Assembly (NCBI RefSeq): GCF_011386835.1
Contig: NC_088803.1
Location: 54,808,001-54,872,000, forward strand
DNA length: 64,000 nt
Reading direction: 5' to 3'
Origin: Chrysemys picta bellii
Lineage: Eukaryota
In this document: positions 3,106-64,000 of the stretch, in pieces
How positions within the stretch are numbered: position 1 is the stretch's first letter
How the letters are laid out: each line of letters opens with the position of its first letter
The notes under the pieces: model-generated
Told to the model about the DNA's origin: nothing
What the model saw: the letters and a program-made list of their open reading frames with translations, nothing else
The model's database searches: none
Program-made: the position numbers and the translations under genes

Positions 3106-9793
<6,688 letters not shown>

Positions 9794-11745: not shown

Positions 11746-11751
11746 TTTATT
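11746..11751 (-). terminator. Probable PLTP polyadenylation signal
   Basis: TTTATT on + (AATAAA on -), about 90 bp after the PLTP stop. Confidence 0.7.
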
Positions 11752-11839
11752 AGTGTCACAGTGCAAGTGCTGCCATGCCTCCCCGAGCAGCTACAGCCAG
11801 GGGCTGGCTCCTGGCGCAGGCCGAGCAGGTGGGTGCTTT

Positions 11840-20800: not shown

Positions 20801-21608
20801 CTGGGCGGTATCACGCCCTAGAGCCTGGCTCTTCAGGGCTGCACCTAGTCCAGTGCTACCAGCCCCTCCCTGGCACCTTCCCTCCACCCACCTCCGCCCA
20901 TCCCGCGAGTCACACCCACCTGCCAGCTCCTTGCCCCTTGGCAGGCCCAGCCCGTTACACACGCTGCTGTCTCGGCCCCTCCAGCCCCAGGTCCTGCCTG
21001 TGCCTGCCCCCCCCCCCCCCCGCCCTCACTTACCCGCTGATGTTGTACTGGAACTGCCCTTCCTTCCCGTGCAGGTCAGGGATGCTGATGTGCTCCAGCT
21101 CCTGCTCCACAAAGCGCAGCCCTTCCTGCTTCACTGCAAAACAACAGCCCTGCTCTGCCCCGGCCTTGGCTCCACGGGGAGGAAAGGAGGCCCCGGCCCT
21201 TCCCCCCAACCCACCCTTCAATCCCAGGGCACTGGCCAGGCCAGGCAAGTCCTTTTCCTGGCAACCCGGATGTATGTAAACAGCCCAGACTTGCCCCAGC
21301 CCCGCTGGGCTCCTTCCCTCCCCAGGGCGGGTGGGCTAAGGACAGCGAACCATCCTGCTCCACCCCGCCGGCTCAGCACCAGCGGCAGGGAGCGTCAGAA
21401 CAGGGGGCACGCCCTGATCTGCTGCCACCCGGGGGTGCTGCTCCGGCAGCTTGTGGTTCCTGACCAGGCCAATGGACTCGGGCTCCCCCAGCTCCTTACC
21501 CAGCTCCAGGCCCTTGGAGGTGATCCGGATCTTGCACCCAGGGGTAGCAGCTCGCCCTGCAGTGACCAGCCAGGGCAGCAGCAGGAGCAGGAGGCTGCAC
21601 AGAGCCAT
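11840..21608 (-). CDS. PLTP: Phospholipid transfer protein (BPI/LBP/CETP family), 535 aa, 15 coding exons
   Basis: Exons in transcript order: 21608-21500, 21133-21034, 20691-20563, 19750-19595, 19440-19377, 18371-18308, 17881-17790, 17559-17389, 16796-16737, 16532-16368, 16170-16103, 15974-15932, 12539-12476, 12397-12321, 12085-11840. All are GT-AG and in phase (1608 nt). Signal peptide, [37 protein letters not shown] and [16 protein letters not shown] match recalled PLTP. Confidence 0.96.
12900..14365 (+). mobile_element. Degenerate CR1 ORF2 (reverse transcriptase region) in the large PLTP intron, interrupted by a MITE
   Basis: Broken-frame motifs [25 protein letters not shown] and [13 protein letters not shown], with stops and frameshifts. 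Boundaries are approximate. Confidence 0.8.
13574..13946. mobile_element. hAT MITE inserted in CR1
   Basis: TIRs CCTAGGCGCTGACTCC / GGAGTCAGCGCCTATG with a perfect 8-bp TSD TCTGTACC (13566-13573, 13947-13954). Confidence 0.88.
14829..15063 (+). mobile_element. CR1 3' end fragment with (ATTCTATG)n tail
   Basis: [46 protein letters not shown], then GGTCCCTTCCAACCCTGAGATTCTATGATTCTATGA. Confidence 0.9.
15064..15500 (+). mobile_element. Second CR1 3' fragment
   Basis: GGACTGTTCAGCTTGGAAAAGAGACGACTAAGGGGGGATATGATAGAG... is homologous to the 3730-4299 copy. The end is approximate. Confidence 0.8.
16850..17375. repeat. C-rich (G-rich on the PLTP sense strand) minisatellite filling a PLTP intron
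   Basis: Repeated CCCTGCCCCTCCTCCCCCATC / TGCATGCCCCTCCCCCTC / CACACCCAGCACCCCTG units between exons 16796 and 17389. Confidence 0.85.
17941..18210. repeat. ~137-bp tandem duplication in a PLTP intron
   Basis: CTGACGCCCCCTCCGCCCC...GCAGCCCACTGCCCCCCAGC occurs at 17941 and again at 18078. Confidence 0.85.
18630..19220. repeat. C-rich minisatellite in a PLTP intron
   Basis: Repeated GCGCCCCACCACCCCGACCC(G/A)CAGCCCC units between exons 18371 and 19377. Confidence 0.85.
20036..20550. repeat. ~40-bp G-rich VNTR (about 13 units) in a PLTP intron
   Basis: Unit GACCTGACCCC(G/A)CGCTGGGGGGCAGAGCGGAGGGGGAGGG; length varies only in the G-runs. Confidence 0.92.
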
Positions 21609-22513
21609 GGCACGTCTGGTCCTGGGGGAGACCAGAGCAGGGCTGTGAGACCGGCTGAGCAGGCAGCCGGGCACCATTCTCAGGCGCCGCGTCACTGCAC
21701 CTTCCCGCTGATGGGAGATGCCAGTGCGCCCGGCTCCCCAGTGGGCGCGGGCGGCCGGGGTGAAGGAGGCCTCCTAGCCCATTACCATCCATTGCTAACA
21801 GACTCTCGCCCAGGACCCTGGGAGCCCCCCAAGCGCCGTGGTTCCCTCCCCCTGGCAGGGAGCCTTGGCCAGACCCTCCGGCATCCTCCCTTGGTGCCCC
21901 CCTGTGACTGGCTCCCCTTCCTCCCATGCAGGTCACTTGGCTTCCCGGGCCGGGCCGGGCCCCCTGGGCCCCCTCGCCAGGGGTCTCAATGCGCAGCCCA
22001 AGAGGGGCCCGGGGAGGGACAAGGGCAGCCGCAGCGGGGCGGGGTGTGTGAGCTGCCCCGGGGGAGCCCGGCCGAGCTGGGGGGGGGGGGGTGCTGTGCG
22101 CCGCCGGCCCTGGTGCCGCACCCGAGTCCCGGGCACGGGGGTCCCCGCCTCTGGCTGCGGGCTCCGGCAGGACGAGCCGCGCTCAGCCGCTGCCCCGATC
22201 TCCCGGCCGCCTGCGCGGGGCGGGGGCTCGGCTCGCCGGCCCCTTCCCCGCCGCGGGGCCCGGCGCTGTGCCCCGGCGTCCTGCGCCCCCCACCCCGGCC
22301 TCGCGCCTGCCGCGGGGAGCCAGGGCCCGGGGCCGCGTCCAGCCCGCCCCCCCCGGCCGGCTGCAGCCCGCCCCTCCCGCGGCCTGCCCCCCCGCCCGCA
22401 CTTGCCTCTGTCCCCAGGGGAACCGGCGCTGGGCTCGGAGCGCAAAACAAATGGCTGGTGCCAGCCAGCTCCCCGAAGCAGCGCCGGGAGGGCCACGGGC
22501 ACCCCCGGGGGGG

Positions 22514-22870
22514 ATGATGGGCACCCCATCCCACAGGGGGCTATGGCCATGCCCAGACCGGGAGGGAGAGGCCATGGGCACCCCACAGGGGGCTATGGCC
22601 ATGCCCAGACCGGGAGGGGGAGGGTATGGGCACCCCACAGGGGGCTATGGCCATGCCCAGACCGGAAGGGGGAGGGTATGGGCACCCCACAGGGGGCTAT
22701 GGCCATGCCCAGACCGGGAGGGGGAGGCCATGGGCACCCCACAGGGGGCTATGGCCATGCCCAGACCGGGAGGGGGAGGGCATGGGCACCCCCAGAGGGG
22801 GGAGGGGATGATGAGCACCCACAGCGGGCTATGGGCATGCCCAGACTGGGAGGGCATGGGCACCCCCAGA
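22514..22870. repeat. 52-bp VNTR upstream of PLTP
   Basis: Unit ATGGGCACCCCACAGGGGGCTATGGCCATGCCCAGACCGGGAGGGGGAGGGT starting at 22574, 22626, 22678, 22730 and 22782, with degenerate flanking copies. Confidence 0.92.
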
Positions 22871-37292: not shown

Positions 37293-40200
37293 ATGGCCAA
37301 TGAGAATCACGGTAGCCCTGGGGAGGAAGCTTCTCTGATGAGTCACTCACCTGGTACCTCTAACCAGAACCAGCCCAGCTCCCCGAAACCCATCCGACTG
37401 GTGCAGGACCTGCCAGGTACTTGTTCTGCTGTTTAGGGGGTCAGGGATATGATTCTGGAGCCCTGTGGCAGCAGAGAGGGAGAGGAGAAAGTTTAGGGTA
37501 AGGAGCCTCTCGGAGCGGTAGAGGGGATTTTGGGATGATATTTCCCCCTTCCCAGCCCCCCACCCCTAGTTTAGCATGTGCTGTGACAGTGATGGGGACT
37601 GGAGCAGCAGGGTTGCTGTCCAGGGCTGCTCTTGTGCTGATACTTTTCCTGTCTCCTAGATGAGCTGGTGCAGGCTGGCTGGGAGAAGTGCTGGAGCAAA
37701 CGGGAGAATCGCCCTTACTACTTCAACCGTTTCACCAACCAGTCTCTGTGGGAGATGCCTGTCCTGGGACAGCACGATGTCATTGTGAGTAACTGTTTGC
37801 CTCAGGTGGTCATAGTGGTGCAGGGATGCCCTACTGGGATTTATATGGCACTCCTGTTGGAGTGGTATTATAGAGAGAGAGCTCCTCTTCTGAGGGTCTG
37901 CTCCTCTCTTGGGATGAAGGTGTCTGGTACTGGCAGGACACTGTGGGGAAGCAGCTTACCCTGCTACAGGTGTCTTTTCTGGCCTTGGCTAGGCATTTCT
38001 CTTTTTGGGGTGGGGACACTGCTGGAATTACCTACTCTCTTCATGTGTCAACCTATAATGCCCCAGTTTCTCTCCACTTGAGAGATTGGGGCAATGAAAT
38101 GGGGAAGACGAGAGCTTGTTCTCTCCAGTTGGAGTTGTGGAAGGCTTGTGAACTAATGATTCTTGTTGTAACTATCCTCTTAGTCGGATCCTCTGGGATT
38201 GAATGCTGCTCCAATGCCTGCGGAAGGAGGAGTGTTGGAAACCACTCCGGAGAGCAAGCCAAGGAAGAGGAGACTCTCTGAGGAAGTTCAGCCCAGTGGT
38301 AACAGCGTGAAGAAAGCTAAGGTGGGTCCTAGTTCTCTGTAAGGTGTCCTTAAGCACATCCAGGTTGGACTAAACACTAGAATTAATGTCAAATATAGTT
38401 TAAGATTAGACAGAAGGAGGGCGGCTACTAAAGAATTGGCCAGCAGATGACAGAGCTGAGTTACTCATGGAAGCTCCTACAAGAACTGAAGATTCTGTGG
38501 CGACACATTTTGAATATTGAGGAAAAACCTGGGTTGCTGAGGGAAAAGGGAGTGGAACTGAGGCAGTCTGCACTGGGCTAAGGCTGCTGAATGCCTGGGG
38601 AGCAGAGAAACGCTTACAAAAGGGATTAAGGTGACAGGATGACTCCAAATTTCTGACTGTCTCATACCACAGATAATGTGTCTAAGTACAGTGCAGCAAG
38701 TGGGCAGAGCCGTGTGTATCAGCCTGCTGGGCCTGCGAGGGGCATGCTCAGGATCTAACTGATCCCCATATGTGGCATTGGGAAGGAATTTTCCCTCTAG
38801 TCATGTTAGCAGTGATCTTGGGGAGGGGTAGTTCGCCTTTTTCTGAAACATGTGGGTGTGGGTCACTTGCCAGGATTATCTGGATATATCTCACTTAATC
38901 ATTTCTAAGCCATTGCAGAGGCCTGGGGCACTTGTGCCCCTAGTTCCCTCCTATTCTTTCCCCGTGCACAGAACAGTCTGGTCTCCTGTGGGCTGTGATA
39001 CTTTAATCGAATTTTGGTTCCTGGGTTAGTGTGTGGGTGCTGACTGGTGTTGGTGGCCTGCGATGTACAGGTGGTCAGACTGGATGATCTGGTGGTTGTT
39101 TCTGGCCTTGCATGCTGTGCCTCTAAAGGGAAGGTTTCCTGTCAAACCAGCCTGAAAGTAACCACTCCTACCAAACCAGGAAGTCAACTGAAAGGTGCTT
39201 CCAGTAATGAAAGGCCAAAAATATCCGATTCCGTAGTGCACAGCAGATGGGAGGCTGTGTCCCAAGAGAGTGAGGCATTCGTTTGAGGGAGGTGATGAGG
39301 GCTGAAAAGCACAGGCCAAGGTGAGAGAGAGAGCACACAAATCTTGCTGCTGTTGATCAAAACTGCAGCAGCTGAATCTGGGAGCATTAGCAAGCACAAA
39401 CCAGTTGGCAAAGAGAAGATTCTTCCTAGCTGTTGTTTTTGTGAGATGGTGACTGGGCTGTGAAAGAGAACCTGTCAGGGAGGTGTCCTGGAGGACTTTA
39501 CAGCCAAGAATCTGTGAGTGAATCTCTGTGAATTGCAACATTCTCTGAGGATTGAGTAAATGGGAGGACTAAGGATAGGAATACGATGGGAGGATAAGCT
39601 GAAGGTAAGCTTTGAGATCATTGTGTTCAAGTGAAAGATGTTCAGTTGTTGCTGATGTTAAGAGTTAACGTTTCTGTTCAGAAGAGTTTTACAAAGTGGT
39701 GGTCGCGGCGCTGTGACAGGAAAATTCCTAGAGTGGCACAGAGTAAGTAACCCTAAAGGAATGGCTGTACAAAGGCACTGTCTTCACTGTGTGTCCCTTC
39801 CTTCCATGGGTGAGACTTGTATTAGAAACCGAAATCAAGGGGGCCTGGAACTTGATCTCAGAGTCACCTGAACTGTTCAAGGTCAGAGGACAGCCCCAGT
39901 TACTGTCTAGTAACTCAGCCCCATGTCGCTTGGCACCCAAAGAACAGGAAAATCGGACTCAGACCTATGCCCAATAGTTATTGTACTTGTGGCGGTGAAG
40001 GAATTGTGTGTGCCTCTGTGCTGGGAGCTGGGCTATGACTGAACAACGGGGTAATGTAGGTGCCCATATTTGTGTATGCCAGAGGCAACGTGAACATACT
40101 CTGTCTCTAGCCATCAGCTGGGCATCCTGAGTTCTGCACTGTTGAGGGAGTGATTTGGGGGATAATCGGCATGGTGCCCCAGTGCCTTATTTTCTAGGGT

Positions 40201-46200: not shown

Positions 46201-49200
46201 CTTTTAATGGGAGCGGTCTGCCTTCTCCTTGCCGTCTGAGAGGGACTCTGAAACAGCCTGGTCTCTTTCCACACTGCCAGGGGAATTCTGCCCAGTGGTG
46301 GTTGCTTGACTTTGAGAGAGAGTTTGAGAATTCAGAGATCCAGCGGGGAGTGGGGGGAAGAATGTAGAGGCCAGAGCAGGCCTCAGTGTATGACAAGGAA
46401 CTACACAAACAATGAAGTATTTATGGACTGGCCTATGGGCTCCGAATGCCGAAGGGTCTAAGTGAAAACTGATCATTGCCTGCTGTTACCCAGCCCTTCA
46501 GTATTAGGCCACTCGTTAAAAGGCCATCCATTAAAACTTAGAGTGCAGGATATTTAGAGCCAATAAAAGGCAGCAATTCCTCCATGTGTAGGCATCCTGT
46601 GAAACACGTGTCATTACTGGTCACCGAGTGAAGGACCATGGCTAGGTCATTTTATGACCACTAACATGGAATAATGCAAACTAAAATCACAAGTTCACCC
46701 GTTTCAGGGTGTTAGCTGATCAGTGGTGGGGTCAGAAAGGAATCGCCCTCCCCATATGAGCAACGTTGCTCAGTTGGCCGGGTGCCTCATTAGCTTTTTG
46801 CCTTTGAAGCATCAGCTATTGGCTGCCTGTGCTGGACTCGACGGGCCAGTGGTCTGATTAGAGATGATCGGCCTGCACAAATGTATAATGAGGGACAGTC
46901 CATGCCCTGAGGGAGAAAAGAACCTGGAGCGGGGCCGGCTCTTCGTTACATGTTTGTCCAGTGCCTAGCGCAGTGGGCCCCTGACCTGGCAGAAGCCTCT
47001 AGCTGCTACTGCAACAGGAGTGTTAAATAATAATACCTGCTGAAGTCAGGACAGCTCCTACTGTCTGTGGGGAGGCTTATCTGAAGAGTGGTGTTAATAG
47101 GCCCCCAGGGTCCCGATTTGTGTCACATGCCCACCCCACAGCAAGCCCCACTCTGGATGTGGGGTCCGTGGTGAAAAGTAAGTTCCCTCTAGTGTCTAGC
47201 CTGCAGTGTGCCACATTAAAAGTTGGAGTTCCTGAAAAATGCTACAAAACTCTCTAACATCTCTACCTCTCCCATCACCTCAGTGTCTGCTTCGCTCAAT
47301 GGATGGGATTGTACTAGCATCCACCATCTCTGATTCCTTATAACTTCAGTCAGCATCCTGTGGCTCTCTAACTCTCCTGCTTCCTTTACTGCTAGTTTTA
47401 ATGACCTGGGTTTCTCTTCCAGTGGCTTCTCTATCGGTACAGTTGCATTGACGACTCTGGCTGTGAGAGGTTTCTGCCCAGGGTTTGGTGCCTTCTCCGT
47501 AGATATCAGGTACTGGTTCCTTCTCCGCTTTTGGGCAGCAGGCAGCTCTGGTGGAATTGTAATACTGACACTGTGAGCAGTGCTCTGGGAGACCCAGCAG
47601 AAAACTATGAACAATCGATCCAGAAGTGGAGCAGAGTTGGGCTAAAACAGTGTTTTCTCCGAGATTTTAGGGTAGGGTGCTACGCTGGGGAACAATCATG
47701 TTGTCTTGACATTAGCCCTCAAGCTTGGAGAAGTGCACACATTTACCAAATGAACCTGAGTTCCAGGTGAGGGGAGCTTCCTAGGAAGGAATGTGTGGTG
47801 ATTGGTGATGTGTGATGGTGGGGCCCAGTTGGACGAAGTGTCTAGAGGGCAGTCTTGACTGGAGACTTGAGAGTGTGGGGCAAAGAAGGGGTGCTGTCAG
47901 CCTGGTGAAATGGGGTATGTGGCCCTGGGTCAGAGTGCAGTGAGAGGGAAGCAATGGTGGTGCTCAGCTCTTATGGGAATCACTCACAGAGGGTTTGCTC
48001 TCCTCAGATGATGTTTGGTGTTGGTCTGTATGAAGGAACTGGCCTGCAGGGGGCACTCCCGGTGCATGTCTTTGAAGCCCTCCACAAGCTCTTTGGAGTG
48101 AGTTTTGAATGCTTTGCCTCGCCCCTGAACTGCTATTTTAAACAGTACTGTTCGGCCTTCCTGGACACAGATGGGTATTTTGGATCCAGGGGGTGAGTCT
48201 TGCATTCTGTTGCCCTTGCCATATGTATACCTATGTGCATGCATTTTTGGCTGGGGTGGGAACTCTATCCTGAACTTAAATTCTCATTGATGACATCAAA
48301 AAGGCTGAGTTGTTCATTGCTATTTTGCTTCAGTCGTCACTTAAAAAGATGAGTGGTGACCAGATATTCAAATAGTTAATCTGGACAGCAAGAGGGGAAG
48401 AACACAAGCCAAAGTCTGGAAAGAAAAGGTAAAGAATCTGAAGCAATCTCAGAACTTTTAGCAGTTCTCTTTGAGAACTCATGGAGGACAAGTGAGGTAT
48501 CACAGGACTAGAAAAGGGCAAACATTGAACCTGTCTTTAAAAAGGAGAACAAAGAGGACCTGGGAAACAGTGGATTGCTTACAATTTGATTAATAGTGTC
48601 AAAATTAGGCTATTAGACGATAATAGCAAATCTATAGGAATAGCTAGGATAGATTTGTCAAGAACAAATCATGTCAAACCAACCTAATTTCCTTCTTTGG
48701 CAGGATTACTGGCCTACTGGTTGTGGGTGGTGATATATGTTGATTTTTAGTAAGGCTTTTGGCACGGCCCCACATGACATTCTTATAAGCAAACCAGGGA
48801 AATGTGGTCTAGAGATGGAATTACTATAAGGTGGGTGCACAGCTGGTTGAAGGACTGTACTCAAAGAGTAGTTATCAATGGTTCGCTGTCAAACTGGGAG
48901 GATGTATCTAGTGAGTTCCCACAGGATTCAGTCCTGGGTCTGGTACTAGTCAATATTTTCATTAATGACTTGGATAATGGAATGGAGATGTGCTTATAAA
49001 ATTTGCGGATGACTCTAAGATGGGAGGGGTGGCAAGCACTTTGGATGGCCAGGATTAGAATTCAAAATTAGCTTGATAAATTGGAGAATTGATCTGAATT
49101 CAGCAACATGAAATTCAGTAAAAACAAGTGCAAAGTACTTCTTTTAGGAAGGAAAAATCAAATGCACGGCTGCAAACTGGGGAATAACTGGCTAGCTGGT

Positions 49201-52037
49201 AGTACTGCTGAAAAGGTTCTGGAGGTTCTAGTGGATCACAGATTGAATGAGAGTCAGGAATGTGATGCAGTTGTGAAAAAGGCTAATATCCTTCTGGGGC
49301 GTATTAACAGGTGTGTCGTATGTAAGACACAGGAGGTAATTGTCCCGCTCTGCTCAACACTGGTGAGGGCTCAACTGGAGTCCTGTCCCCAGTTCTGGGC
49401 ACCGCACTTTAGGAAAGATGTGGGCAAATTTAAGAGAGTCCAGAGGCAAGCAACAAAAATGATAAAAGGTTTTAGAAATCCTGTTGTATGATGAACGGTT
49501 AAAAAAAACTGGGCCTGTTTAGTCTTGAGAACAAACAACTGAGGGGGGACTTTTTAGAACAGCCCTTTACAGATGTGAATAATGTTATAGACGACGCTGA
49601 CCAATTGTTCTCCATGTCCACTGGAGCTTGGACAGGAAGTATCTGCAGCCATGGAGAGTTAGGTTAAATACTTGGAAAAACGCTCTAATTCGAAGTGTAG
49701 TTAAACTCTGGAATTGGCTTCCAAGGGAGGTTGTCAAATCCTCATAACTGGAGGTTTTTAAGAACAGGTTTGACAAACACCTGTCAGGGATGGTCTAGGT
49801 TTACTTGGTCCTGCCTCAGTACAGGGGGCTGGATTTGATGACTTTTTGGGGTCCCTTCCAGGCCTACATTTCTGTGATTTACTCCAGGCCTGGTTGTGAG
49901 GGTATATGGGCATGGATTGGCTATGAAATGAACAGGACTGTGTTGCAGGCCCTGGATTTGGCTTGTTCATTAGGTCTGTGGATATATGCCCCTCTCGTTC
50001 TGAAGGAAGAGGGAGCCTCAAACAAGAGATTGAAAATAGTGAACTTGGAGCCAAGGAATGTCGGCCTACAGGTTCCCAGGTGAAGTCTCTCTCCTTGGTG
50101 ACCGTTTGTGCCACAGGGGAAGTAAATGTGGCAGGCCCTGCCCTGCTAGGAAGTCAGGTTGCATGTGGCTGCCCTTTCACAGATGCTGATGGTTTCTAAG
50201 ATGTTTGAATTAACAGTTGGTCCTCCCTAACTGGGATCTTTTCCCTTGTTCCCTTCAGCCCATTCCTGGATTTCATCCCCATAAGTGGCTCTTTTGAGGC
50301 AAATCCTCCATTCTGTGAGGAACTGATGGATGCCATGGTCTCTCACTTTGAGGTACGTTCACTTATCCCTGTCACTGTGCTTGGACTGGGACAGTCCTCT
50401 CTCTCCCCTCTGCTGCTATCCCGCATCCCCATGGCAGGGTTACAGATCAGCAGGCCACCGAGGACTGGGGCAGCTCTTATGCTGGTCTCAGAGAAGGGTG
50501 CGTTTCCTTCTCACAGAGCCTGTCGTGCTTGTCGTTACTTGATCAAAAATAAGAATCTTCTTTCCTTTTCCTTGTGGATTAGAAACTGCTGGAGAGCTCC
50601 AATGAGCCCCTCTCCTTCATTGTCTTCATCCCTGAGTGGAGGGACCCTCCGACACCAGCCCTGACCCGCATGGAGCAGAGCAAGTTCAAGCGGCACCAGC
50701 TCATCCTGCCAGCCTTCGATCATGAGTACCGCAGCGGGTCTCAGCATATCTGCAAAAAGTAGGTCTTTCTCGCAAGTCTGGGTTGGGATGCTCTTGAGAT
50801 GTACTGCATTTTAGAGAGGCCCTTGGCAGGAATCCCCTTCTCCGAGGTGACATTGGTTGGGGTATGGAACAGGCTAAGAAAAAAGCAAAGTGATGTATCC
50901 AAAATGAACCTCGAGCACATCTCAGATTGGGCTCAACAGACAGTATCAAGGCTCACCGTATTTGTGTATATTTCCCAACTATTAAAAATTGACGTCAGCC
51001 TCTCCCTCAGGGACATGTCTCTGACCTGTGTATGTCAGATCGCACTGTGGAGAAGAGCCATGTGCCACTCGCCAGCATACAGTCTGAGGTGCGGCTGGCT
51101 GAGCAGAGTAACTTTCTGGGCTTGTCAAGGTCCTGTGGCCTCTGCCATTCAGTAACAGTTAAAAAGAAGCAGAAGCTTGGGCCAGTTTTCACTATTGGCG
51201 TCTGTATGGCAGGCTAACAGCTTGCTTGGTGGGCAGCAAGTTGGTTGGCCCAGGATGTCTGACAACATGATTTTTCGTAGCTGGGATGGTAGGAATTCCC
51301 AGCTGTGTATGTTGGAGTAGGAGCTGCGCTGCAAGATCTGTACAGTGTTCCCTCTTCTCTGACTTGTTGAGCTTCTTGCAATCTTCCTGTTCCCCAGGAG
51401 CTAATGGTACTGCAGTATGTAGTTAGCCAGAGCAGCCCTTGTAGTGTCCATGGGAAGTAACACACACTGATTCTCTGAGGTTCTCCTTTGGAAGCCTCTT
51501 GACCCCATGTGGGCACCACAGAGCTCGCAGTGGGGTCCTAGCTATAGAGCTGTATTGGCACGTCAGGACAGATACCTCCCAAGTGAGGGGCTGTGTGCTG
51601 CATCTTTGAATTTTAACTCACCGGTATGGCTTTCTTTTAAGAGAGAATGGCTGTTCCTCAGTACGACACAAGGGAAGGGAGATGGGGAGGACATTAGTGT
51701 GGGAGGATCCAGGTGCAGCTGAGCGACTGGTTGGACAGGCCCATGAAGCGAGAACTAAGCACCTGTCGTCTTCCCTTGCAGAGAGGAGATGTACTACAAA
51801 GCCGTGCACAACACTGCTATCATCTTCCTACAAAACAACGCAGGCTTCACCAAGTGGGAGCCCACGCCAGAGCGGCTGCAGGAGCTCGTCACAGCCTATA
51901 AGCACTCGGGACGGACCCTCAGTTCCACAGGTTCCTCCTCCACCTCCTCTTCCTCCTCCACCTCTTCCTCGACAGCAGAGAAAGATCGGGAGACGGGCGG
52001 AGAGCAAAGCACCAGCCGGGAGACCAATGCCAATTAA
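37293..52037 (+). CDS. PCIF1: PCIF1/CAPAM, cap-specific adenosine N6-methyltransferase, 712 aa, 15 coding exons
   Basis: Exons 37293-37416, 37660-37784, 38184-38321, 40226-40356, 40574-40728, 41660-41807, 41994-42077, 43473-43572, 44649-44811, 45971-46143, 47423-47509, 48008-48192, 50259-50352, 50583-50758, 51782-52037. All are GT-AG and in phase (2139 nt). MANENHGSP start, WW domain ([28 protein letters not shown]), ECFASPLN and the catalytic NPPF motif are present. Confidence 0.97.
40969..41605. mobile_element. hAT MITE in a PCIF1 intron
   Basis: TIRs TAGGGCTCTACCAAATTCA / TGAATTTGGTAGGGCCCTA; TSD GCCATAAT / ACCATAAT. Confidence 0.85.
42767..43093. mobile_element. hAT (Charlie-like) MITE in a PCIF1 intron
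   Basis: TIRs CAGTGGTCCCCAA / TTGGGGACCCCTG with a perfect TSD TGGTAGAA. Confidence 0.88.
45184..45433. mobile_element. PIF/Harbinger MITE in a PCIF1 intron
   Basis: TIRs GGCTATGTCGACACTA / TAGTGTAGACATGGCC with a TTA target-site duplication on both sides. Confidence 0.85.
48430..49870 (+). mobile_element. Degenerate CR1 ORF2 and 3' end in a PCIF1 intron
   Basis: [12 protein letters not shown]...[37 protein letters not shown] and [11 protein letters not shown] motifs with frameshifts, ending GGTCCCTTCCAG. Boundaries are approximate. Confidence 0.85.
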
Positions 52038-52870
52038 TCTGCAGAGAGCAGTGTGTGGGGACAGACAGCAGGGGGCGAAGGGAACAGTGCTCCAGAGGAG
52101 GGGAGGTTTGATGTGGCAGGTGGAGAGACTGCTGGCTGTGTAGTGCCAGGCCTGGGGGACTCTCTTCAGGCAGCTCCACACTGCTTGCTTTCCTCTGTAA
52201 ACCTGCAAGGCCACTTTCCTCACCCGAGTGGAGGGAGATTCCCTCGCCTTATGCCCCGTGGGAAGAAGATCGGCTGCTGCCCTAGACGAGGGGCAAAGAA
52301 GCCAAACGTCGCAGTCATAGGAAGAGTCTGTAGCCCCTTCAAACACTAAAGCTCTGAGGAAGAGGCAGCTGGAGCTGGGACGGATGAAGGAAGGACGGAC
52401 GGACTGACAGACAGAGCTGTGGCCTAGCAGGTCCCTGGCAGCTGGCTGAAGCCTGTCGTTTCCAAGAGAAAAGCCGGCAGGGGCCAGAGGCTCTTCCTGC
52501 TGGCCGGGCACAGAACCCAGCTCCGTGTTCACAGTGTAAATAGTTCTGTCCGTGGCGACCAGGCTCCCTGCAGGGTTTGTTTCCGTAGCGTCCATGTTTC
52601 CTTTCCACATGTGCGAGTTCCGTGTTTGCCGAAGCTGTTTACCATATACAAGAAAAGCAGAGAAAAGGAATTTCTTTTTGTGTGTAAAAACGTCTTTGCA
52701 GCTGTTTTGTAGTCGTTGTGGTTTTTACCCAGAGCCCACTGGGCTTTATTTAACCTCCTTGGGTTTTGTTTTTTAAGGATTAATTTAACACCGCTAACCG
52801 TTTTATTACTTTTATCAAAGAAAGCAAAGGAAAGTCTATTTTTGATTTTTGTTTCCTAGTTCTTAGGGAC

Positions 52871-52876
52871 ATTAAA
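52871..52876 (+). terminator. Probable PCIF1 polyadenylation signal (ATTAAA)
   Basis: ATTAAA preceded by U-rich elements. An AATAAA also occurs near 53142. Confidence 0.6.
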
Positions 52877-53839
52877 AACCAGCATTACAGCTCCCCTTGG
52901 TGTCGGTGCTATTCCTCATCTGGGGGGCTGGGGACTGTCTGTGGGAGGCAGGGCCTGCCCTGCCCGCCCTCAGATTCACTGCCTTCTCCTGTGCCCCTGG
53001 ACTGGGTGAACTCTAGGAAAATGATCATTTCTTACGGAATTACACTTTGAATCTGTTTATCTGTAGGGTTTGTGCGTTGAGTTGGGCAGAGTTGTGTGCA
53101 GCATTGCTAAAACACAGTATATCCAAAATGTCTGGGAGTTAAATAAAACTGGTCCAACGATAAATAGCAGAGACTGAGGGATAGGCAAGGGAAAAGAGAC
53201 CATTTTGCTGAGATTTAAAATGGCACGTCAGTGAGAGGGAGAGATGGTAGGCACTCTAATACATCGGCCATAGGCTCCTTAGAACCACACCAGAGAGGGG
53301 CTTTCACTCCAGTAATAGAAAGAATGTTTCAGAGGACATGGAGGGGGAGGTATCAGCGTTCTGTTAGTGAAGTCGAGTAGGGAAAATTTGAACTGGCTCT
53401 TAGAATAACGGGGGAATCAGCTAATAGTGCTGAGGATTGTGGGTGACATGAGCTCCCTTCTTTGTATTTGAGGAGAAAGGGGCAGAAGCACTCTGCATAT
53501 GCTGGAATCTGAGGTACTGGGACTTACAGAGGCCTTGGAAGAGGAAATTGCTATAGTTCAGGCAAGAGGAGAGAGGCCTGATACAGTGTAGTTGAGACCA
53601 TTGTGAATGAGATCCTGTTCAGCCAGGGTGCAAATGTGGGTGAAGATGATGTCAGGACTGGAGACCATGATGGCAGCCAGAGATACATGAGAGGATGGAG
53701 TTTGGCTTGGGGAGGCACCTGCCCAAGAGCAGCTTTTTGGGGTTTGGGACATTTAACTGAAATGATATAAAGCCACAGCTATGTTGGTCAGAGAGGCCTA
53801 GAGGGCAGTCCGGGAGGATTTATAGATTGGTGGGGCCAT

Positions 53840-57430: not shown

Positions 57431-59199
57431 AAGACCAATCCCTGAGGAACTCCACTAGTAACTCCACTCCCTCCAGCCTGACCCTTCACCTTTCAGTACT
57501 GCCCGTGGTAGTCTCCCCTTTAACTCACGGTTAAGGGAGTTGAATGCTGCCCTGGAGAATTGGATTCTGTCCCTGCCTGAGCCACGAAGTACTTTACTGT
57601 TACACGGGGCAAGTCATTGAAACCAGACTTTTCACATGTGGCCACTAACTGTATTCCTCATTTTTTTGGGTGTCTGGTGTGAGATGGTTGGGTCTGCAGT
57701 GCTCAGAGCTGAACTGAAGTCACCGAGAGCGATGCTTTGAACATAAACAGTGCTCTATAATGCTAAGCACTCTGAAAAACCAGATACCAGTGTCTCAAAT
57801 TGGGCACCAAAATTAGTGGGAAGTTTTGACCTTAGCCGCCCTGTGCCTCAGTTCCCCATCTAGGAAATGAGGATAATTATGCACCCATCTCCTACTCCCC
57901 CGCCCCCCGGCGCTTAGGTGTTCAGGTCAGTTTCTACTCTCTCCCTCCTGTCCTCAGCACTGCTGCCTCGCTAGCTTTGTGCTGTCTCCCTGGCAGCTGC
58001 ACGGGCAAGGAGGGGTGTTTGCAATGCTGTCTCCGCCTCTGTCTTGTAGGGCTGTCGATCCAGCACCCTTCATCAGCACTGGATTTCACTCCAAATGTGC
58101 GACAGAACTGATCTGGGTGGGAGCTGCTGCAGCTGCCCTTCCACCTGAGGGAGCCAGGCTGCCTGACATCCTTTGCCCCGAGCTGATCCTGGTGCATAAA
58201 GAGGGGTGCGAAAAGGAATTGGGTTGGTTTGAGCTCCAGCAGAAACTCGACAGCGAAAGTGCAGTGTGCCAATGGGGAAAGGGGGCCAGGGCAGAGAGCT
58301 GGGCCATGGTCCTGCCTCAGTCCCGGGGAGGAGCTTGGATGCCCCAGTGGTAGATTACATCTGTGATGGAGTCCTAGGCTGCAGGCAGGTTTGTGCTGGG
58401 TGTGGGGCTCTTTAGTTCCCTAGAAATCCCAGGTGCTTTGAGTGGAGTGTTTCAGGTCTGGGATCTAGGACAGATGGCACGTGTCTGAGTCACCTGCGCC
58501 CCTTACGTTTTCATTCCTGGGGCGGGCTCCCTGCAGCCCCTGGGAGGAGAGACCGAGGAGCGGCCAGGCGGGATTGGGCTCAGGCTTGTCTGTTGCAATA
58601 TCTTCCTAGAGTCAGGCGCGCCACCAGCGTTTCTGCCGCCCTAGGCGCCAGAAGGTCCTGCCCTGAAATGCCGCCGCGGTCGCCACCCACCACATTGTAG
58701 CACTCTAGGCCACCGCCTAGGTCGCCTAATGGGTTGTGCCAGCCCTGCCTGGAGTGAAAGCCTTGTGCTCGGAGAACCGCCCTTGGCCTGGCCTGGGGGG
58801 TGGCACAGCACCACCGTAGCTCCGGGAAAGCAGCATGTGTTGGGCCCAAGGCCTAGGAAATGAAGAGGGTTTATTCTGCACTTGCATAACGTGCCCCTAG
58901 GCCGCTGGAGTGCAGCTCTGAGGATGGGAGCTGGGGCCCTGCTCACCTCCAGGCCTGCCACGCGCGGCTGAGGCTGGGTCTGCCCTGCGAGCTGGAGGGA
59001 TGACTGAGGCCCAGGGGTTAGTCGTTATCAGCCCTGTCGCAGCTGAGCAGGGCTGCGGAGCGACGCTGGACTAAGCCCTGCTGGAGCTGCCTGCAGCCGC
59101 CTCTGCCCCAAGCCAACCACTGAGTGGGGGTGGGAGTTAGTGTTTGTACAGCGCCGGGCACAGCGGGGCCCTGGTCTGAGCAATACAAGTAACGGTTCA

Positions 59200-59900
59200 A
59201 GCGGCGTTTTACCAATTCTCCCCCCCACCACGCGCGCTCGTCTCCCTTCCCCCGCCCAACAGCCCGTCTGCGTCCTGGCGAGGGGGCAGGGCTGGAGCAG
59301 CGGCGGGTGGCGGGGCGGCCCCTTCCCTTCCCCAGGGGCTGAGCCGGGCCGGGCCGGTCCCCCCAGCCCCTCCGCTCCTCGCTGCCATGCCAACGCCGGG
59401 GCGGATGCTCGCAGCCTCCGTGCGTCGGGGGCCGGCTGCGCGCGGGGCCGGGCAGGGCTCGGCCGGCGCCACGGGGCGCGCACACGGCCCCGCCGCAGCC
59501 CGGGCTCCCGGCGAGCAGGTGAGCGGCCCTGGCCCGCGGGGGGACCCGCCGGCCGCGGGAGGAGGGGGCCGGGCTCCCCCGCCCTGCCCCGGGCCGCTCC
59601 GGCACGCCCTGCCCGGCTCCAGCGCCGCGTCCGGCGGGAGGGGCGCAGACGGGGGTCTCAGGCCTCTGCCTCGCTCCCCACGGGGCCCCGGGTGCCCGGC
59701 GCTGCCAGGCCTGGCCTTTGGCGCGGGCTCCTGCTTCTACCTGAGAGGCGGCAGCCCCAGGTTCTCGAAACCGGCCGGTGCCCGGGGAGCTGGGCAGCCC
59801 TCGCCGCGCCATGCCCCAGCCGTGCCGGGCACACGCAGGCGCTGCAGTGTCCCAGCCTGGGTCGCACAGCGGCTGGGCCCTGCACAAACCTTCTAGGCCC
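59200..59900 (+). promoter_or_regulatory. CpG island, probable promoter and non-coding exon 1 of the RNF182-like gene
   Basis: Dense CpG and GC boxes, donor CAG|GTGAGC at 59518/59519, and acceptor CTTCTCTCCAG| at 60289, 30 nt before the ATG. Confidence 0.65.
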
Positions 59901-60319
59901 CTGGCTGAGCCGGGGGGCTGGTCGCTGCCGCCCCAGGGAGGGAGCTCAGAGCCTCTGCCCAGGCAGCTGCCACGGCTCGGTGCAGGGGCAGCAGGTGCCA
60001 GCTCTGATGACGTCCTGTGATGTGCACACCTGCCAGGAGGCCGGGGCCGCACGCCAGCCCAGGCGGGATAGGGCAGGGTCCGAGCGAAGGGCTCTCCTTG
60101 GCTCCCTGCACTGCACAGCCCCCTGAATTGCTGCCCCGAACGAGGCCCCTCACCCTTTCTAGCCTGGGGTGGCTTTGCTGGAGGCCCCGAGGGAGGGGCA
60201 GGGCACTTGGGACTCTGCTTACAAACCCTTTACTCATGGAGGTCTCCCCGTCCCTCTCCCCAGGCTGGGCTCTAGGACCTTCTCTCCAGGAGCTCCGAGC
60301 GGCTTCCGGAAGGGAGACC

Positions 60320-61051
60320 ATGAGCCACAAGGATGGCAAGCTGGAGAGCTGCCAGCCGCTGGTGTTCACGGCGCACGAGCTGGAGTGCAAGATCTGCTAC
60401 AATCGCTACGACGCACGGGCCCGCAAGCCCAAGCTCCTCAGCTGCTGCCACCGGGTCTGCGCCAAGTGCCTGCGCAAGATGGTGGCCATGGGGGAGTCCT
60501 CGCCCCGCCTGCTCAGCTGCCCTTTCTGCCGGCAGGAGACCCAGGTCCCCGAGGAGGACGTGCAGCTGCTCCAGGATGACAGCAAGGTGCTGGCAGTGCT
60601 GACATACCACGAGCGGGCACAGAAGCGAGGCACTCTGCCCTCCCCTGAGGTCATCCTGTGCCCCAGCGTCCTGGAGCCCTCCCGCAGCTCCTCTGACTGC
60701 CTGGTCATCACCATCCTGGAGGTGCCAGAGGACGTGGCGCCCCCCGAAGGCCTGGGCATGCTGGACATGATACGCCTGTACCGCCCCACCAGCCTGGACT
60801 CGCTGCCCTGCCGCGGCCCCATCCAGAAATGCCGCTCTTGCACCTGGCATGCCATACCCCACTTCATCCTCTGGATGCTTTGCCTCATCTACTTCAGCTC
60901 CCTGCCCTTCGGCATCTACCTCCTGCTCATTGAGCGCCACAACCTGGGCATCGTGCTGGTCAGCCTGGTGCCCTCCACCCTCCTTCTCTGTGTCTTTTAC
61001 AGCTTCTGCCAGTGTCTGTGCCGTGAGATCTTCGAGTTCCCCTCCACCTGA
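60320..61051 (+). CDS. RNF182-like RING-HC E3 ubiquitin ligase with two C-terminal transmembrane helices, 243 aa, single coding exon
   Basis: ELECKICYNRY...KPKLLSCCHRVCAKCL...CPFCRQET (C3HC4), SSDCLVITILEV, LYFSSLPFGIYLL and VSLVPS...FCQCLC closely parallel recalled human RNF182. Good Kozak context (ACCATGA). Orthology is uncertain, so no symbol is given. Confidence 0.92.
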   Translation: MSHKDGKLESCQPLVFTAHELECKICYNRYDARARKPKLLSCCHRVCAKCLRKMVAMGESSPRLLSCPFCRQETQVPEEDVQLLQDDSKVLAVLTYHERAQKRGTLPSPEVILCPSVLEPSRSSSDCLVITILEVPEDVAPPEGLGMLDMIRLYRPTSLDSLPCRGPIQKCRSCTWHAIPHFILWMLCLIYFSSLPFGIYLLLIERHNLGIVLVSLVPSTLLLCVFYSFCQCLCREIFEFPST

Positions 61052-61208
61052 GCCTGCTGCTCCCCTGTGTCCTGCAGGCACCAGGCCCTGGCCCTGCACT
61101 GCCTGGACCTCCCCGAGGCTGTGCCCTGTGCCTGGGGCTGGCCGAGAGCATCCCCTCTCAGGGCTTGCCAGCCCCCACAGTTACTGCAGGGAGACGGGAG
61201 ATGGCAGG

Positions 61209-62487
61209 GTGGGAGGGTCCAGGTGCAGCTGAGCGACTGGTTGGACACGAAGCGAGTACTGAGCACCTGTCGTCTTCCCTTGCAGAGAGGAGATGTACTA
61301 CAAAGCCGTGCACAACACTGCTATCATCTTCCTACAAAACAACGCAGGCTTCACCAAGTGGGAGCCCACGCCAGAGCGGCTGCAGGAGCTCGTCACAGCC
61401 TATAAGCACTCGGGACGGACCCTCAGTTCCACGGGTTCCTCCTCCACCTCCTCTTCCTCCTCCACCTCTTCCTCGACAGCAGAGAAAGATCGGGAGACGG
61501 GCGGAGAGCAAAGCACCAGCCGGGAGACCAATGCCAATTAATCTGCAGAGAGCAGTGTGTGGGGACAGACAGCAGGGGGCGAAGGGAACAGTGCTCCAGA
61601 GGAGGGGAGGTTTGATGTGGCAGGTGGAGAGACTGCTGGCTGTGTAGTGCCAGGCCTGGGGGACTCTCTTCAGGCAGCTCCACACTGCTTGCTTTCCTCT
61701 GTAAACCTGCAAGGCCACTTTCCTCACCCGAGTGGAGGGAGATTCCCTCGCCTTATGCCCCGTGGGAAGAAGATCGGCTGCTGCCCTAGACGAGGGGCAA
61801 AGAAGCCAAACGTCGCAGTCATAGGAAGAGTCTGTAGCCCCTTCAAACACTAAAGCTCTGAGGAAGAGGCAGCTGGAGCTGGGACGGATGAAGGAAGGAC
61901 GGACGGACTGACAGACAGAGCTGTGGCCTAGCAGGTCCCTGGCAGCTGGCTGAAGCCTGTCGTTTCCAAGAGAAAAGCCGGCAGGGGCCAGAGGCTCTTC
62001 CTGCTGGCTGGGCACAGAACCCAGCTCCGTGTTCACAGGGTCAATAGTTCTGTCCGTGGCGACCAGGCTCCCTGCAGGGTTTGTTTCCGTAGCGTCCATG
62101 TTTCCTTTCCACATGTGCGAGTTCCGTGTTTGCCGAAGCTGTTTACCATATACAAGAAAAGCAGAGAAAAGGAATTTCTTGTTGTGTGTAAAAACGTCTT
62201 TGCAGCTGTTTTGTAGTCGTTGTGGTTTTTACCCAGAGCCCTCTGGGCTTTATTTAACCTCCTTGGGTTTTGTTTTTTAAGGATTAATTTAACCCCGCTA
62301 ACCGTTTTATTACTTTTATCAAAGAAAGCAAAGGAAAGTCTATTTTTGATTTTTGTTTCCTAGTTCTTAGGGACATTAAAAACCAGCATTACAGCTCCCC
62401 TTGGTGTCGGTGCTATTCCTCATCTGGGGGGCTGGGGACTGTCTGTGGGAGGCAGGGCCTGCCCTGCCCGCCCGCCCTCAGATTCAC
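61209..62487 (+). other. Direct duplicate of PCIF1 terminal intron end + last exon + 3' UTR + poly(A) signal (source about 51699-52978)
   Basis: Exon copy 61286-61541 encodes the same C-terminal peptide as 51782-52037 (offset 9504). It has an intact CCCTTGCAG acceptor and ATTAAA at 62375-62380. I counted 7 substitutions over about 1.18 kb. Confidence 0.97.
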
Positions 62488-62877
62488 CCTCTTCTGCTCT
62501 CTCCTGCTGTGCCCCTGAGCTCGCTGACCCGGCTGCTGGAGCATGGGGGGGATGGAGGAGGAAGCCCCCAGCCCATGTGATCATTATTTTCACTCTTTGT
62601 CTTGGAGCGTCTTCCGGTGCAAACCACAGGCTTGTTGCTAGCCGTGTCTGCCCTGCGTGTTACTGGGGCTGTTGGCCGGCCAGACCCTTCTACAGAGGTG
62701 AGGCTGCGTCCTGCCCTGCTGGCTTTGGGACTCCCCAGCAGCTGCGTGGTCTCCACGGTCCGCAGCCGGGCTATAATCTAGACCCCACCACGGCTGTAAT
62801 GGACGGTTCGCTGCAGTAGCAGGAGGATTTATATCCCCGGTGAGCCACACACGGCCATGGAGCTGTGGAGCCCGGCC

Positions 62878-63205
62878 CCGGAGAACCGGGTGCTGGAGAA
62901 CTCAGACCCAGAGAGCTCAGCTCCGGAGAACCGGGCGCCGGAGAACTCAGCCCCGGAGAGCTCAGCTCCGGAGAACCGGGCGCCGGAGAACTCAGACCCA
63001 GAGAGCTCAGCTCCGGAGAACCGGGCGCCGGAGAACTCAGCCCCGGAGAACTGGGCCCCGGAGAACCGGCGCCGGAGAACTCAGATGCAGAGAGCTCAGC
63101 TCCGGAGAACCGGGCGCCGGAGAACTCAGATGCAGAGAGCTCAGCTCTGGAGAACCGGCGCCGGAGAACTCAGCCCCGGAGAACCGGGCCCCGGAGAGCC
63201 CGGCT
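62878..63205 (+). repeat. 15-bp minisatellite, 22 units, with a 45-bp higher-order pattern
   Basis: Units CCGGAGAACCGGGCG / CCGGAGAACTCAGCC / CCAGAGAGCTCAGCT. Two units are 14 bp (near 63058 and 63147). Confidence 0.93.
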
Positions 63206-64000
63206 CATGGCCATGTTGGCACTCGTGCTGGCTGTCACAGGGAGGGCTGTGCAAAGCATTTGCCCACAGTAGGATGCCTGTCCTTCCCACCCTGCAGCCC
63301 AGGATCAGCCCCGTGTGCCAGGAACCCTCAGCCATCAGCGAGGGGGAGGGAGGGGGGTCTCCATGCTCCACCCCCCAGCTCGTGCTGCTCCTGCGGCTAA
63401 GATGCCCTTTGCCACCAGTGAGAACTGAAGCCACACAAGCCTGAAACCTGCCCCAGCCTCTCCAGGTCCCTCACCCCATCTGCTGCCTGGCTCTCAGTGC
63501 CCCCAGGACGCTCCGCTGGCTGGGGGTTGCCCATGGGGATGTCTGTGGGGAGTGGGGCTGGCTGGGCCTGCAGAGGGGAGCGTGGTGGAACAGTTCTGTT
63601 GCTGCATGTGGCAGGCAGCTGTTTCTGGGAGGGGGAGCCCCTGACTTTGGGGGCAGGAGCTCATGGGGAGACCTGACCAAAACTCAGACAGCGTCAGCGC
63701 GGAATGGGGCGGCCCCGGCGCTGCCTCTGGCCTGTGGGGTCCCCGGTCAGCTCCCTGGGGCAGCGCTCTCCGCTGCCAGAGAAACTGCAACGACCCCCTG
63801 CTAGCTCTCAACGCCGGCCCCCAGCCCGCCCCATGGAGTAACCCCCAAGGCCCCTGGGGGGAGCCATTGCCCAAGACACCTGGGTGCTGGGAGGCCTCTT
63901 GTGACTGGCTGTTCCATAGGCTTTTCCTGCCCCATGGATGTTTGAGCCCCATAGGCCGGTGGGGGGGGGGGCAGCGGTGTGGGAACTGGGGGTGCTGCAC

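What the first reader, a model, noticed from the sequence alone, without database searches (positions are those of the whole stretch)
61052..62380. The RNF182-like gene appears to borrow its 3' UTR and poly(A) site from PCIF1
Seen: only ~157 bp of unique sequence separate the RING-gene stop (61051) from the duplicated block, and it has no AATAAA or ATTAAA. The first signal is the duplicated ATTAAA at 62375-62380. Inference: two unrelated mRNAs, a cap methyltransferase and a membrane E3 ligase, would carry near-identical ~0.85 kb 3' UTRs. They would share miRNA and RBP sites and could be co-regulated or compete. The ligase mRNA would also carry a silent downstream ORF (61293-61541) for the PCIF1 C-terminal peptide. 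Practically, 3'-tag expression data would confound the two genes.
Basis: partly seen in the sequence, partly recalled or inferred. Interest (0 to 1): 0.7.

Follow-up and report, generated by a model that had tools for sequence, protein, structure and literature searches.

The report
PCIF1 tail copied behind RING gene
In the painted turtle, a 1.27-kb copy of the last exon, 3'UTR and poly(A) site of PCIF1 sits 154 bp after the stop codon of the neighbouring RNF182-like ligase gene; other turtles and birds have the same copy, kept nearly identical to the original by repeated gene conversion since before turtles and birds split, but I could not test whether the ligase mRNA ends there.

Summary
Window 61206-62473 (copy B) matches 51696-52969 (copy A) at 98.7% over 1274 columns. 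Copy A is the PCIF1 intron tail, last exon, 3'UTR, ATTAAA and about 95 bp beyond. Copy B starts 154 bp after the stop of a 243-aa RING/two-TM RNF182-like gene (60320-61051). Its ATTAAA (62375-62380) is the only canonical plus-strand signal from that stop to the convergent TGIF2 coding sequence.

New here: this is not a recent turtle duplication. Copy B lies at the same position, behind an orthologous spacer, in Mauremys, kiwi, duck, kittiwake, owl and song sparrow. Two squamates lack it. Within each species A and B are 86-99.6% alike, against 72-86% between turtles and birds. The tree pairs A with B by species, and a B-only clade is rejected (AU p = 3e-32). That indicates one old duplication followed by recurrent gene conversion.

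Copy B is not constrained as copy A is. Duck and sparrow have lost the hexamer, and B-derived changes hit PCIF1-invariant columns as often as variable ones.

The only hint is four runs, guessed to be RNA, that hold 94-99% of the CDS-plus-spacer words. The borrowed 3' end is therefore plausible in turtles, while selected co-regulation is unsupported.

An earlier scan note (s1-318373) recorded the same duplication on this window.

The parts
37668..38078 (+). ORF holding the PCIF1 WW-domain exon
   Evidence: Pfam WW, E = 8e-10
47954..48193 (+). ORF holding a PCIF1_WW (catalytic region) exon
   Evidence: Pfam PF12237, E = 7e-27
51696..52969 (+). Copy A: PCIF1 last-intron tail (about 86 nt), last exon (from about 51782), stop codon ending 52037, 3'UTR, and about 95 nt past the poly(A) signal
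   Evidence: The gene call ending here is a 712-aa product.
52871..52876 (+). PCIF1 poly(A) signal ATTAAA (copy A)
   Evidence: It is conserved in lizard, gecko, turtles and birds.
60320..61051 (+). RNF182-like CDS: 243 aa, N-terminal RING, two C-terminal hydrophobic helices
   Evidence: Pfam zf-RING_5 28.1 bits against a cutoff of 27.9. Homologues are named RNF182 or RNF182-like. Hydropathy peaks at about 179-205 and 207-234.
61052..61205 (+). Unique spacer between the RING stop and copy B; 70% GC, no poly(A) hexamer
   Evidence: It is orthologous in Mauremys and birds.
61206..62473 (+). Copy B: duplicate of copy A, 98.67% identical
   Evidence: It is present at the same place in 6 other archelosaur species.
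61293..61541 (+). Silent ORF in copy B, identical to the 82-aa C-terminal peptide of PCIF1, preceded by an intact acceptor-like ttgcag at 61280-61285
62375..62380 (+). Copied ATTAAA; the only canonical plus-strand poly(A) signal from the RING stop to the TGIF2 CDS
62400..62414 (+). GU-rich stretch (cttggtgtcggtgct) 20-34 nt after the hexamer; the likely downstream element, inside the duplicated block
   Evidence: Read directly; its function is inferred

Best explanation
Shown: before turtles and birds split, and after squamates branched off, one partial duplication put a copy of the 3' end of PCIF1 about 135-155 bp downstream of the stop codon of the next gene on the same strand. The copied segment was the intron tail, terminal exon, 3'UTR and poly(A) site. 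The receiving gene is an RNF182-like membrane RING ligase. Since then the copy has repeatedly been overwritten from the PCIF1 original by interlocus gene conversion over 5-9.5 kb. As a result the two copies are 98-99.6% alike in most species, although turtle and bird sequences differ by 15-28%. Between conversions copy B drifts freely. It collects nearly all the differences, has suffered deletions, and in duck and song sparrow has lost the hexamer.

Inferred: in the painted turtle the RNF182-like pre-mRNA, which has no other canonical signal, runs through the 154-nt spacer and the silent PCIF1 exon copy. It is cleaved about 12-20 nt after the copied ATTAAA. That gives a 3'UTR of about 1.35 kb whose last 0.86 kb is near-identical to the PCIF1 3'UTR. 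The shared sites are a by-product of conversion and need not be a selected co-regulation device.
For: Duplication.

Same position and orthologous spacer in Mauremys, Apteryx, Anas, Rissa, Melospiza and Bubo. The spacer is about 136 nt in turtle and about 135 nt in duck.

Absence in Podarcis and Eublepharis, which do have the PCIF1-RING adjacency.

Concerted evolution:
- The tree pairs A with B within each species: support 100/100 duck, 100/99 sparrow, 100/99 turtle, 93/90 kiwi.
- The AU test rejects a B-only clade, with delta lnL 509 and p = 3e-32.
- Identity is mosaic. In owl the distal UTR is 99.6% identical while the coding remnant is 73% by BLAST; the segment table gives the other species.

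Direction A to B: A branches are about zero and B branches longer in 4 of 5 pairs. In the exon and UTR, 6 of 7 turtle differences are B-derived relative to Mauremys.

Poly(A) use: the B hexamer is the only canonical plus-strand signal between the RING stop and the TGIF2 CDS in 5 of 7 species. The full module (hexamer, CA, GU-rich stretch) lies inside the block. Runs X1-X4, guessed to be RNA, hold 0.94-0.99 of the words of 60250-61205, which includes the whole spacer.
Against: Runs X1-X4 are only guessed to be RNA.

Duck and sparrow have no canonical plus-strand signal anywhere between the RING stop and TGIF2. This gene can therefore evidently do without one, and the same could hold in the turtle.

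There is no hexamer-specific conservation in copy B. In kittiwake the intact hexamer among 6 flanking changes has a chance probability of about 0.26 by my estimate.

B-derived changes are not depleted at PCIF1-invariant columns: pooled OR 0.82, p = 0.32; sparrow 49/300 against 27/146.

The duck contigs are colinear with the genome and may be DNA.
Confidence: 0.6

Rival explanations
1. Copy B is a functionless relic that stays similar only because conversion is frequent in this GC-rich, closely spaced, same-orientation pair. The RNF182-like mRNA ends at a non-canonical site or elsewhere and does not depend on the copied poly(A) site.
For: - The hexamer is lost in duck and sparrow, which have no canonical signal at all in the interval.
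- B branches are longer than A branches.
- Copy B has deletions of the proximal UTR (Neoaves) and of the coding part (kiwi).
- B-derived changes are not depleted at A-invariant columns.
Against: In 5 of 7 species the B hexamer is intact and is the sole canonical signal before the convergent TGIF2 CDS. The spacer has no common variant hexamer either. Runs guessed to be RNA cover the spacer right up to the block.
Confidence: 0.27
2. Copy B is, or is also, an alternative terminal exon of PCIF1. Transcripts that skip the first poly(A) site would splice from the penultimate PCIF1 exon over the RING gene to the intact acceptor at 61280-61285, giving the same protein.
For: In turtle and duck the acceptor-like sequence and the whole coding tail are intact and encode the identical peptide.
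Against: The coding part and acceptor have decayed or been deleted in kiwi, kittiwake, owl and sparrow, so this use is not conserved. Intactness in turtle and duck is explained by conversion tracts. Gene calls end PCIF1 at copy A in all species.
Confidence: 0.07
3. Independent recent duplications arose in each lineage, or the duplication is an assembly artefact.
For: High within-species identity taken alone.
Against: - The junction, the orthologous spacer and the orthologous downstream flank are the same across species.
- Neoaves share a deletion of the proximal UTR.
- At the intron-tail edge, window B matches Mauremys B rather than window A.
- Seven separate assemblies show the copy, and eight duck contigs from other runs break 30 nt into copy B while a ninth runs through it.
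Confidence: 0.03

Closest known systems
BEX / WEX / GASP genes on mammalian Xq22: a shared 5'UTR element kept by gene conversion (Winter & Ponting 2005, PMC1274310)
   Same: A non-coding transcribed segment is shared by genes whose coding regions are unrelated or highly diverged. It is homogenised independently in different lineages by gene conversion, producing 'chimaeric' genes whose UTR and CDS have different histories (abstract).
   Different: - Here the segment is a 3' end (terminal exon, 3'UTR and poly(A) site), not a 5'UTR motif.
- There are two copies only, not more than 20 genes.
- The donor is a conserved housekeeping-type gene.
- The clade is turtles plus birds.
- Expression of the copy as a UTR is not yet shown.
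Interlocus gene conversion between tandem duplicates, e.g. CYP21A2 and its pseudogene (PMC3843699, title and abstract only)
   Same: Closely spaced, same-orientation copies; within-species identity exceeds between-species identity; mosaic tracts; one copy acts mainly as acceptor.
   Different: Those are whole-gene paralogues. Here only the 3' terminal module of one gene was copied, and it lies behind a non-homologous gene.
Chimeric genes made by partial duplication that recruit a foreign 3'UTR or poly(A) site (general knowledge, not tested here)
   Same: A partial duplicate supplies the 3' processing signals to a neighbouring or fused coding region.
   Different: No coding fusion occurs: the RING ORF stops 154 nt before the copy. 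The copy has been kept like its source by conversion and has not diverged.
RNF182 (RING plus two-TM E3 ligase family)
   Same: N-terminal RING, two C-terminal hydrophobic helices, about 245 aa, single coding exon. The best homologues are annotated RNF182 or RNF182-like.
   Different: This is the PCIF1-linked 'RNF182-like' gene seen in fishes, amphibians and sauropsids. No mammal appears among the 120 listed hits, and I did not test this further. Ligase activity is untested.

Membership tests
RNF182-like RING E3 ligase | RING-type zinc finger near the N-terminus | tested here: met
   Pfam zf-RING_5, residues 22-72, 28.1 bits against a cutoff of 27.9. zf-RING_2 scores 27.1 against 27.3, just under. 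TRIM RING domains in PDB match at E = 3e-9.
RNF182-like RING E3 ligase | Two C-terminal transmembrane helices | tested here: met
   Kyte-Doolittle 19-residue windows above 1.6 at about 179-205 and 207-234. This is hydropathy only.
RNF182-like RING E3 ligase | Full-length homology to proteins named RNF182 or RNF182-like | tested here: met
   269 hits. Mauremys 93%, Gopherus 91%, Apteryx 83%, fishes about 60%, all at about 100% coverage.
PCIF1 (cap-specific adenosine methyltransferase) as source of the block | WW domain plus PCIF1_WW region upstream on the same strand, with the gene ending at copy A | tested here: met
   (WW and PF12237). The 712-aa gene call ends at window 52037. Orthologous calls carrying PF12237 end at copy A in Anas, Podarcis and Eublepharis.
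Concerted evolution by interlocus gene conversion | Paralogous copies within a species are more alike than orthologous copies between species | tested here: met
   Identity matrix and tree. AU rejects a B-only clade, p = 3e-32.
Concerted evolution by interlocus gene conversion | Single origin: same insertion point and flanks in all species | tested here: met
   Spacer alignment, orthologous flanks, and a deletion shared by Neoaves.
Concerted evolution by interlocus gene conversion | Mosaic identity with tract boundaries | tested here: met
   Owl: 99.6% over 509 bp beside a 73% coding remnant. Kittiwake: 94% beside 75%. At the turtle intron-tail edge, B follows Mauremys B.
Concerted evolution by interlocus gene conversion | GC-biased substitution pattern or polymorphic tracts in populations | not tested
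   No population data were at hand.
Functional poly(A) site used by the RNF182-like mRNA | Hexamer, cleavage dinucleotide and GU-rich downstream element | tested here: met
   ATTAAA 62375-62380, CA 62392-93, GU-rich 62400-62414.
Functional poly(A) site used by the RNF182-like mRNA | Transcripts from the RING exon that end there with a poly(A) tail | not testable with these tools
There is only an indirect hint from runs guessed to be RNA.
Functional poly(A) site used by the RNF182-like mRNA | Conservation of the signal in copy B across species | tested here: inconclusive
   Kept in 5 of 7 species; lost in duck and song sparrow.

The most novel reading that the evidence does not exclude
Selection, and not merely frequent conversion, keeps the two 3'UTRs alike. 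On this reading PCIF1 and the RNF182-like ligase form a post-transcriptional regulon that has shared the same distal-UTR elements since before turtles and birds split. Those elements would include the near-invariant UUUUAU-rich 110 nt before the poly(A) site. Conversion events would be favoured because they restore those sites.
Probability: 0.1. Interest if true: 0.75.

Novelty: new member of a known kind. Interest (0 to 1): 0.5.

Why it matters
If the ligase mRNA really ends at the copied site, this is a clean natural case of one gene's 3' processing and regulatory module being donated to an unrelated neighbour. It would then have been kept in step with its source by gene conversion across turtles and birds. 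That makes it useful for measuring how long conversion can hold non-coding copies together, and for asking whether shared UTRs couple two genes.

There are practical consequences too. 3'-tag and short-read quantification of PCIF1 and the RNF182-like gene will be confounded in turtles and many birds. Gene predictors already call spurious small proteins from the copied exon, such as the 130-aa product in Mauremys. Orthology or age estimates taken from the copies' similarity would be wrong by two orders of magnitude.

Tried and rejected
No depth, ends, joints or copy-specific letters were obtained.
- The first sequencing-run run failed. The second worked, but no holder is on record as RNA.
- Gopherus protein P0002 is not on record for a locus.
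- The window's own RING protein is found only in the genome record, with no Logan contig.
- The duck Logan contigs are all colinear with the genome. Eight of nine break 30 nt into copy B. The ninth follows A-like letters and stops where A and B diverge. They cannot tell RNA from DNA.
- Rfam found nothing near a gathering score in 59000-64000.
- Pfam on the 82-aa tail ORF gave only a weak low-complexity hit.
- No paper links PCIF1 and RNF182 beyond one carp QTL list. The painted-turtle genome paper has Iso-Seq data, but no supplements are held.
- The gar locus has no PCIF1 within 10 kb and no homology to the block, so it cannot polarise the origin.
- I considered whether TGIF2 on the minus strand needs the AATAAA that copy B offers on that strand. 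I rejected this as a general explanation, because TGIF2 has its own proximal signals in 6 of 7 species.
- A test for depletion of B-derived changes at PCIF1-invariant columns was not significant.

Full report
**What is in the window**

[quoted passage not shown] The exact RING protein is found only in record GCA_011386835.2 CM062330.1. That accession is tied to this species in PMC13077969.

On the plus strand lies PCIF1. Pfam finds a WW domain in ORF 37668-38078 and PCIF1_WW in 47954-48193. The 712-aa gene call ends at 52037.

Downstream on the same strand is a 243-aa gene, 60320-61051. It has an N-terminal RING (TRIM RINGs in PDB) and two C-terminal hydrophobic helices. Its homologues are annotated RNF182 or RNF182-like in turtles, birds, squamates, amphibians and fishes. 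TGIF2 follows on the minus strand, just beyond the window.

**Checking the observation**

blastn of 60000-64000 against the rest of the window gives one hit: 61206-62473 = 51696-52969. Identity is 98.67% over 1274 columns, with 11 mismatches and 2 gaps.

Copy A comprises about 86 nt of the last PCIF1 intron, the last exon, the stop at 52035-52037, a 3'UTR of about 0.85 kb, ATTAAA at 52871, and about 95 nt beyond. Copy B carries all of this:
- the acceptor-like ttgcag at 61280-61285;
- an 82-aa ORF (61293-61541) identical to the PCIF1 tail, with one synonymous difference;
- ATTAAA at 62375-62380;
- a CA at 62392-93 and a GU-rich stretch at 62400-62414.

There is no AATAAA or ATTAAA between the RING stop and 62375. 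None follows up to 64000, nor up to the TGIF2 coding sequence. The empty 154-nt spacer is not informative in itself, since composition predicts 0.002 hexamers. The duplication is the real feature.

**The arrangement is old and shared**

I fetched the orthologous loci through the RING protein. Copy B follows the RING gene in all of these:

| Species | Locus | A and B coordinates | A-B identity |
|---|---|---|---|
| Mauremys mutica | L001 | B 10890-12178 | 93% to both window copies |
| Apteryx | L002 | A 5541-6454 = B 11717-12623 | 97.9% |
| Rissa | L003 | A 5694-6209 = B 11778-12281 | 94%; coding remnant 75% |
| Anas | L005 | A 5375-6404 = B 10899-11929 | 98.7% |
| Melospiza | L007 | A 7370-7769 = B 11032-11418 | 85.7% |
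| Bubo | L020 | A 6126-6634 = B 11075-11583 | 99.6%; coding remnant 73% |

The spacer between the RING stop and the copied intron tail is alignable across turtles and birds. It has nearly the same length in turtle and duck, about 136 and 135 nt. Downstream flanks are orthologous. Three Neoaves share a deletion of the proximal UTR in copy B, and kiwi lacks the coding part.

Two squamates, Podarcis (L004) and Eublepharis (L018), have PCIF1 followed by the RING gene but no copy B. Their RING genes are followed by their own AATAAA 1.1-1.7 kb after the stop.

Hence a single duplication occurred after squamates branched off and before turtles and birds split. By general knowledge that is roughly 250-280 million years ago, which I did not compute here. 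Loss in squamates is the alternative polarity, and the gar locus could not decide it.

**Concerted evolution**

A tree of the distal 3'UTR pairs A with B within every species. Support is 100/100 for duck, 100/99 for sparrow, 100/99 for painted turtle and 93/90 for kiwi. Forcing the six B copies into one clade costs 509 log-likelihood units, and the AU test gives p = 3e-32.

Within species the distal UTR copies are 82-99% alike in that alignment, while turtle and bird sequences are 74-86% alike. With a single origin established by the junction, the only reading is repeated interlocus gene conversion.

The identity is mosaic. The distal 450 nt are 97.9-99.8% alike in five species, next to decayed or deleted segments. 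At the 5' edge of the turtle block, window B agrees with Mauremys B against window A. That is what is expected outside the latest tract.

A branches are about zero and B branches are longer in four of five pairs. In the exon and UTR, six of seven painted-turtle differences are B-derived. PCIF1 is therefore the donor and copy B the acceptor.

**Is copy B used or selected?**

In favour of use:
- In five of seven species the copied ATTAAA is intact. It is the only canonical plus-strand signal between the RING stop and the convergent TGIF2 coding sequence.
- Four runs of the window's organism, sized like transcriptomes and guessed to be RNA by the tool, hold 0.94-0.99 of the sampled words of 60250-61205. 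They could not reach that share without covering the whole spacer.

Against selection:
- Duck has mutated the hexamer (AGTGAG in the multiple alignment), and sparrow has lost homology about 25 nt before it. Neither has any canonical plus-strand signal in the interval.
- B-derived changes fall on columns invariant among the six archelosaur PCIF1 UTRs as often as on variable columns. Sparrow shows 49/300 against 27/146, and the pooled OR is 0.82 with p = 0.32.

So nothing shows that the RING gene needs the PCIF1 elements. The likeness looks like a by-product of conversion.

**What could not be done**

Transcript ends, continuity and copy-specific letters are therefore untested.

The duck Logan contigs are colinear with the genome and break at the repeat boundary. 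They do not distinguish RNA from DNA.

The painted-turtle paper reports Iso-Seq from 12 tissues, which would settle the matter, but its files are not held here.

**Comparison with what is known**

The closest precedent I found is the BEX/WEX/GASP cluster. There a 5'UTR element is shared among unrelated coding regions and kept by lineage-specific gene conversion (PMC1274310). This case has the same logic at a 3' end, with two copies and a conserved donor gene. Partial duplications that donate 3' ends, and conversion between tandem copies, are both well known. I therefore file it as a new member of a known kind.

No paper in the library links PCIF1 with RNF182-like in this way. I verified it independently.

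**Verdict**

The main added value is the evidence of an ancient origin and sustained gene conversion.

Noticed in passing
window 62249-62254 and 62306-62311 (inside copy B); same letters in copy A: TTTATT, which reads AATAAA on the minus strand and faces the convergent TGIF2 gene. In duck the only canonical minus-strand signal between the TGIF2 stop and the RING gene lies inside copy B. In the other six species TGIF2 has its own signal 121-603 nt after its stop. Copy B might serve as a distal TGIF2 poly(A) site.
   Followed up: partly
window 52780-52890 (copy A) and 62284-62394 (copy B); L004 1150-1260; L018 about 7640-7906: The last 110 nt or so of the PCIF1 3'UTR are almost invariant from gecko and lizard to turtles and birds. 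They contain two UUUUAU-type motifs (TTTTATTACTTTTATC) close to the hexamer, which look like cytoplasmic polyadenylation elements. Function untested.
   Followed up: no
window 62878-63197: A tandem array with a 15-nt unit (GGAGAACTCAGCCCC, about 20 copies) and a 45-nt super-unit, about 0.4 kb downstream of copy B. It gives long ORFs in three frames. It aligns only partly with Mauremys.
   Followed up: no
window 16800-22850: Several GC-rich (67-71%) tandem arrays with periods of about 41, 52, 57 and 137-165 nt (families D1, D3-D5, D7; composition). Their nature is unknown.
   Followed up: no
L003 (Rissa) 10870-11600: About 700 bp lie between the copied intron tail and the rest of copy B, and a 263-aa gene is called across it (10960-12021). 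This is probably an insertion that yields a spurious ORF.
   Followed up: partly
L001 (Mauremys) 10885-11277: A 130-aa 'gene' is called on the copied PCIF1 exon in copy B. Such calls are likely annotation artefacts of the duplication.
   Followed up: partly
L006, L010-L017 (duck Logan contigs): Eight of nine contigs from five studies end exactly 196 nt after the RING stop, which is 30 nt into copy B. Three of them start within 30 nt of each other (L005 9661-9690), which might mark a transcription start if those runs are RNA.
   Followed up: partly
window 60262-60267: An acceptor-like ctctccccag about 55 nt upstream of the RING ATG. The kiwi model has an extra upstream coding exon (341 aa). The RING gene may have a spliced 5' leader.
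   Followed up: no
The search for homologous proteins list: No crocodilian and no mammal appears among the 120 listed RNF182-like hits. This could be gene loss or missing annotation, and it was not checked.
   Followed up: no
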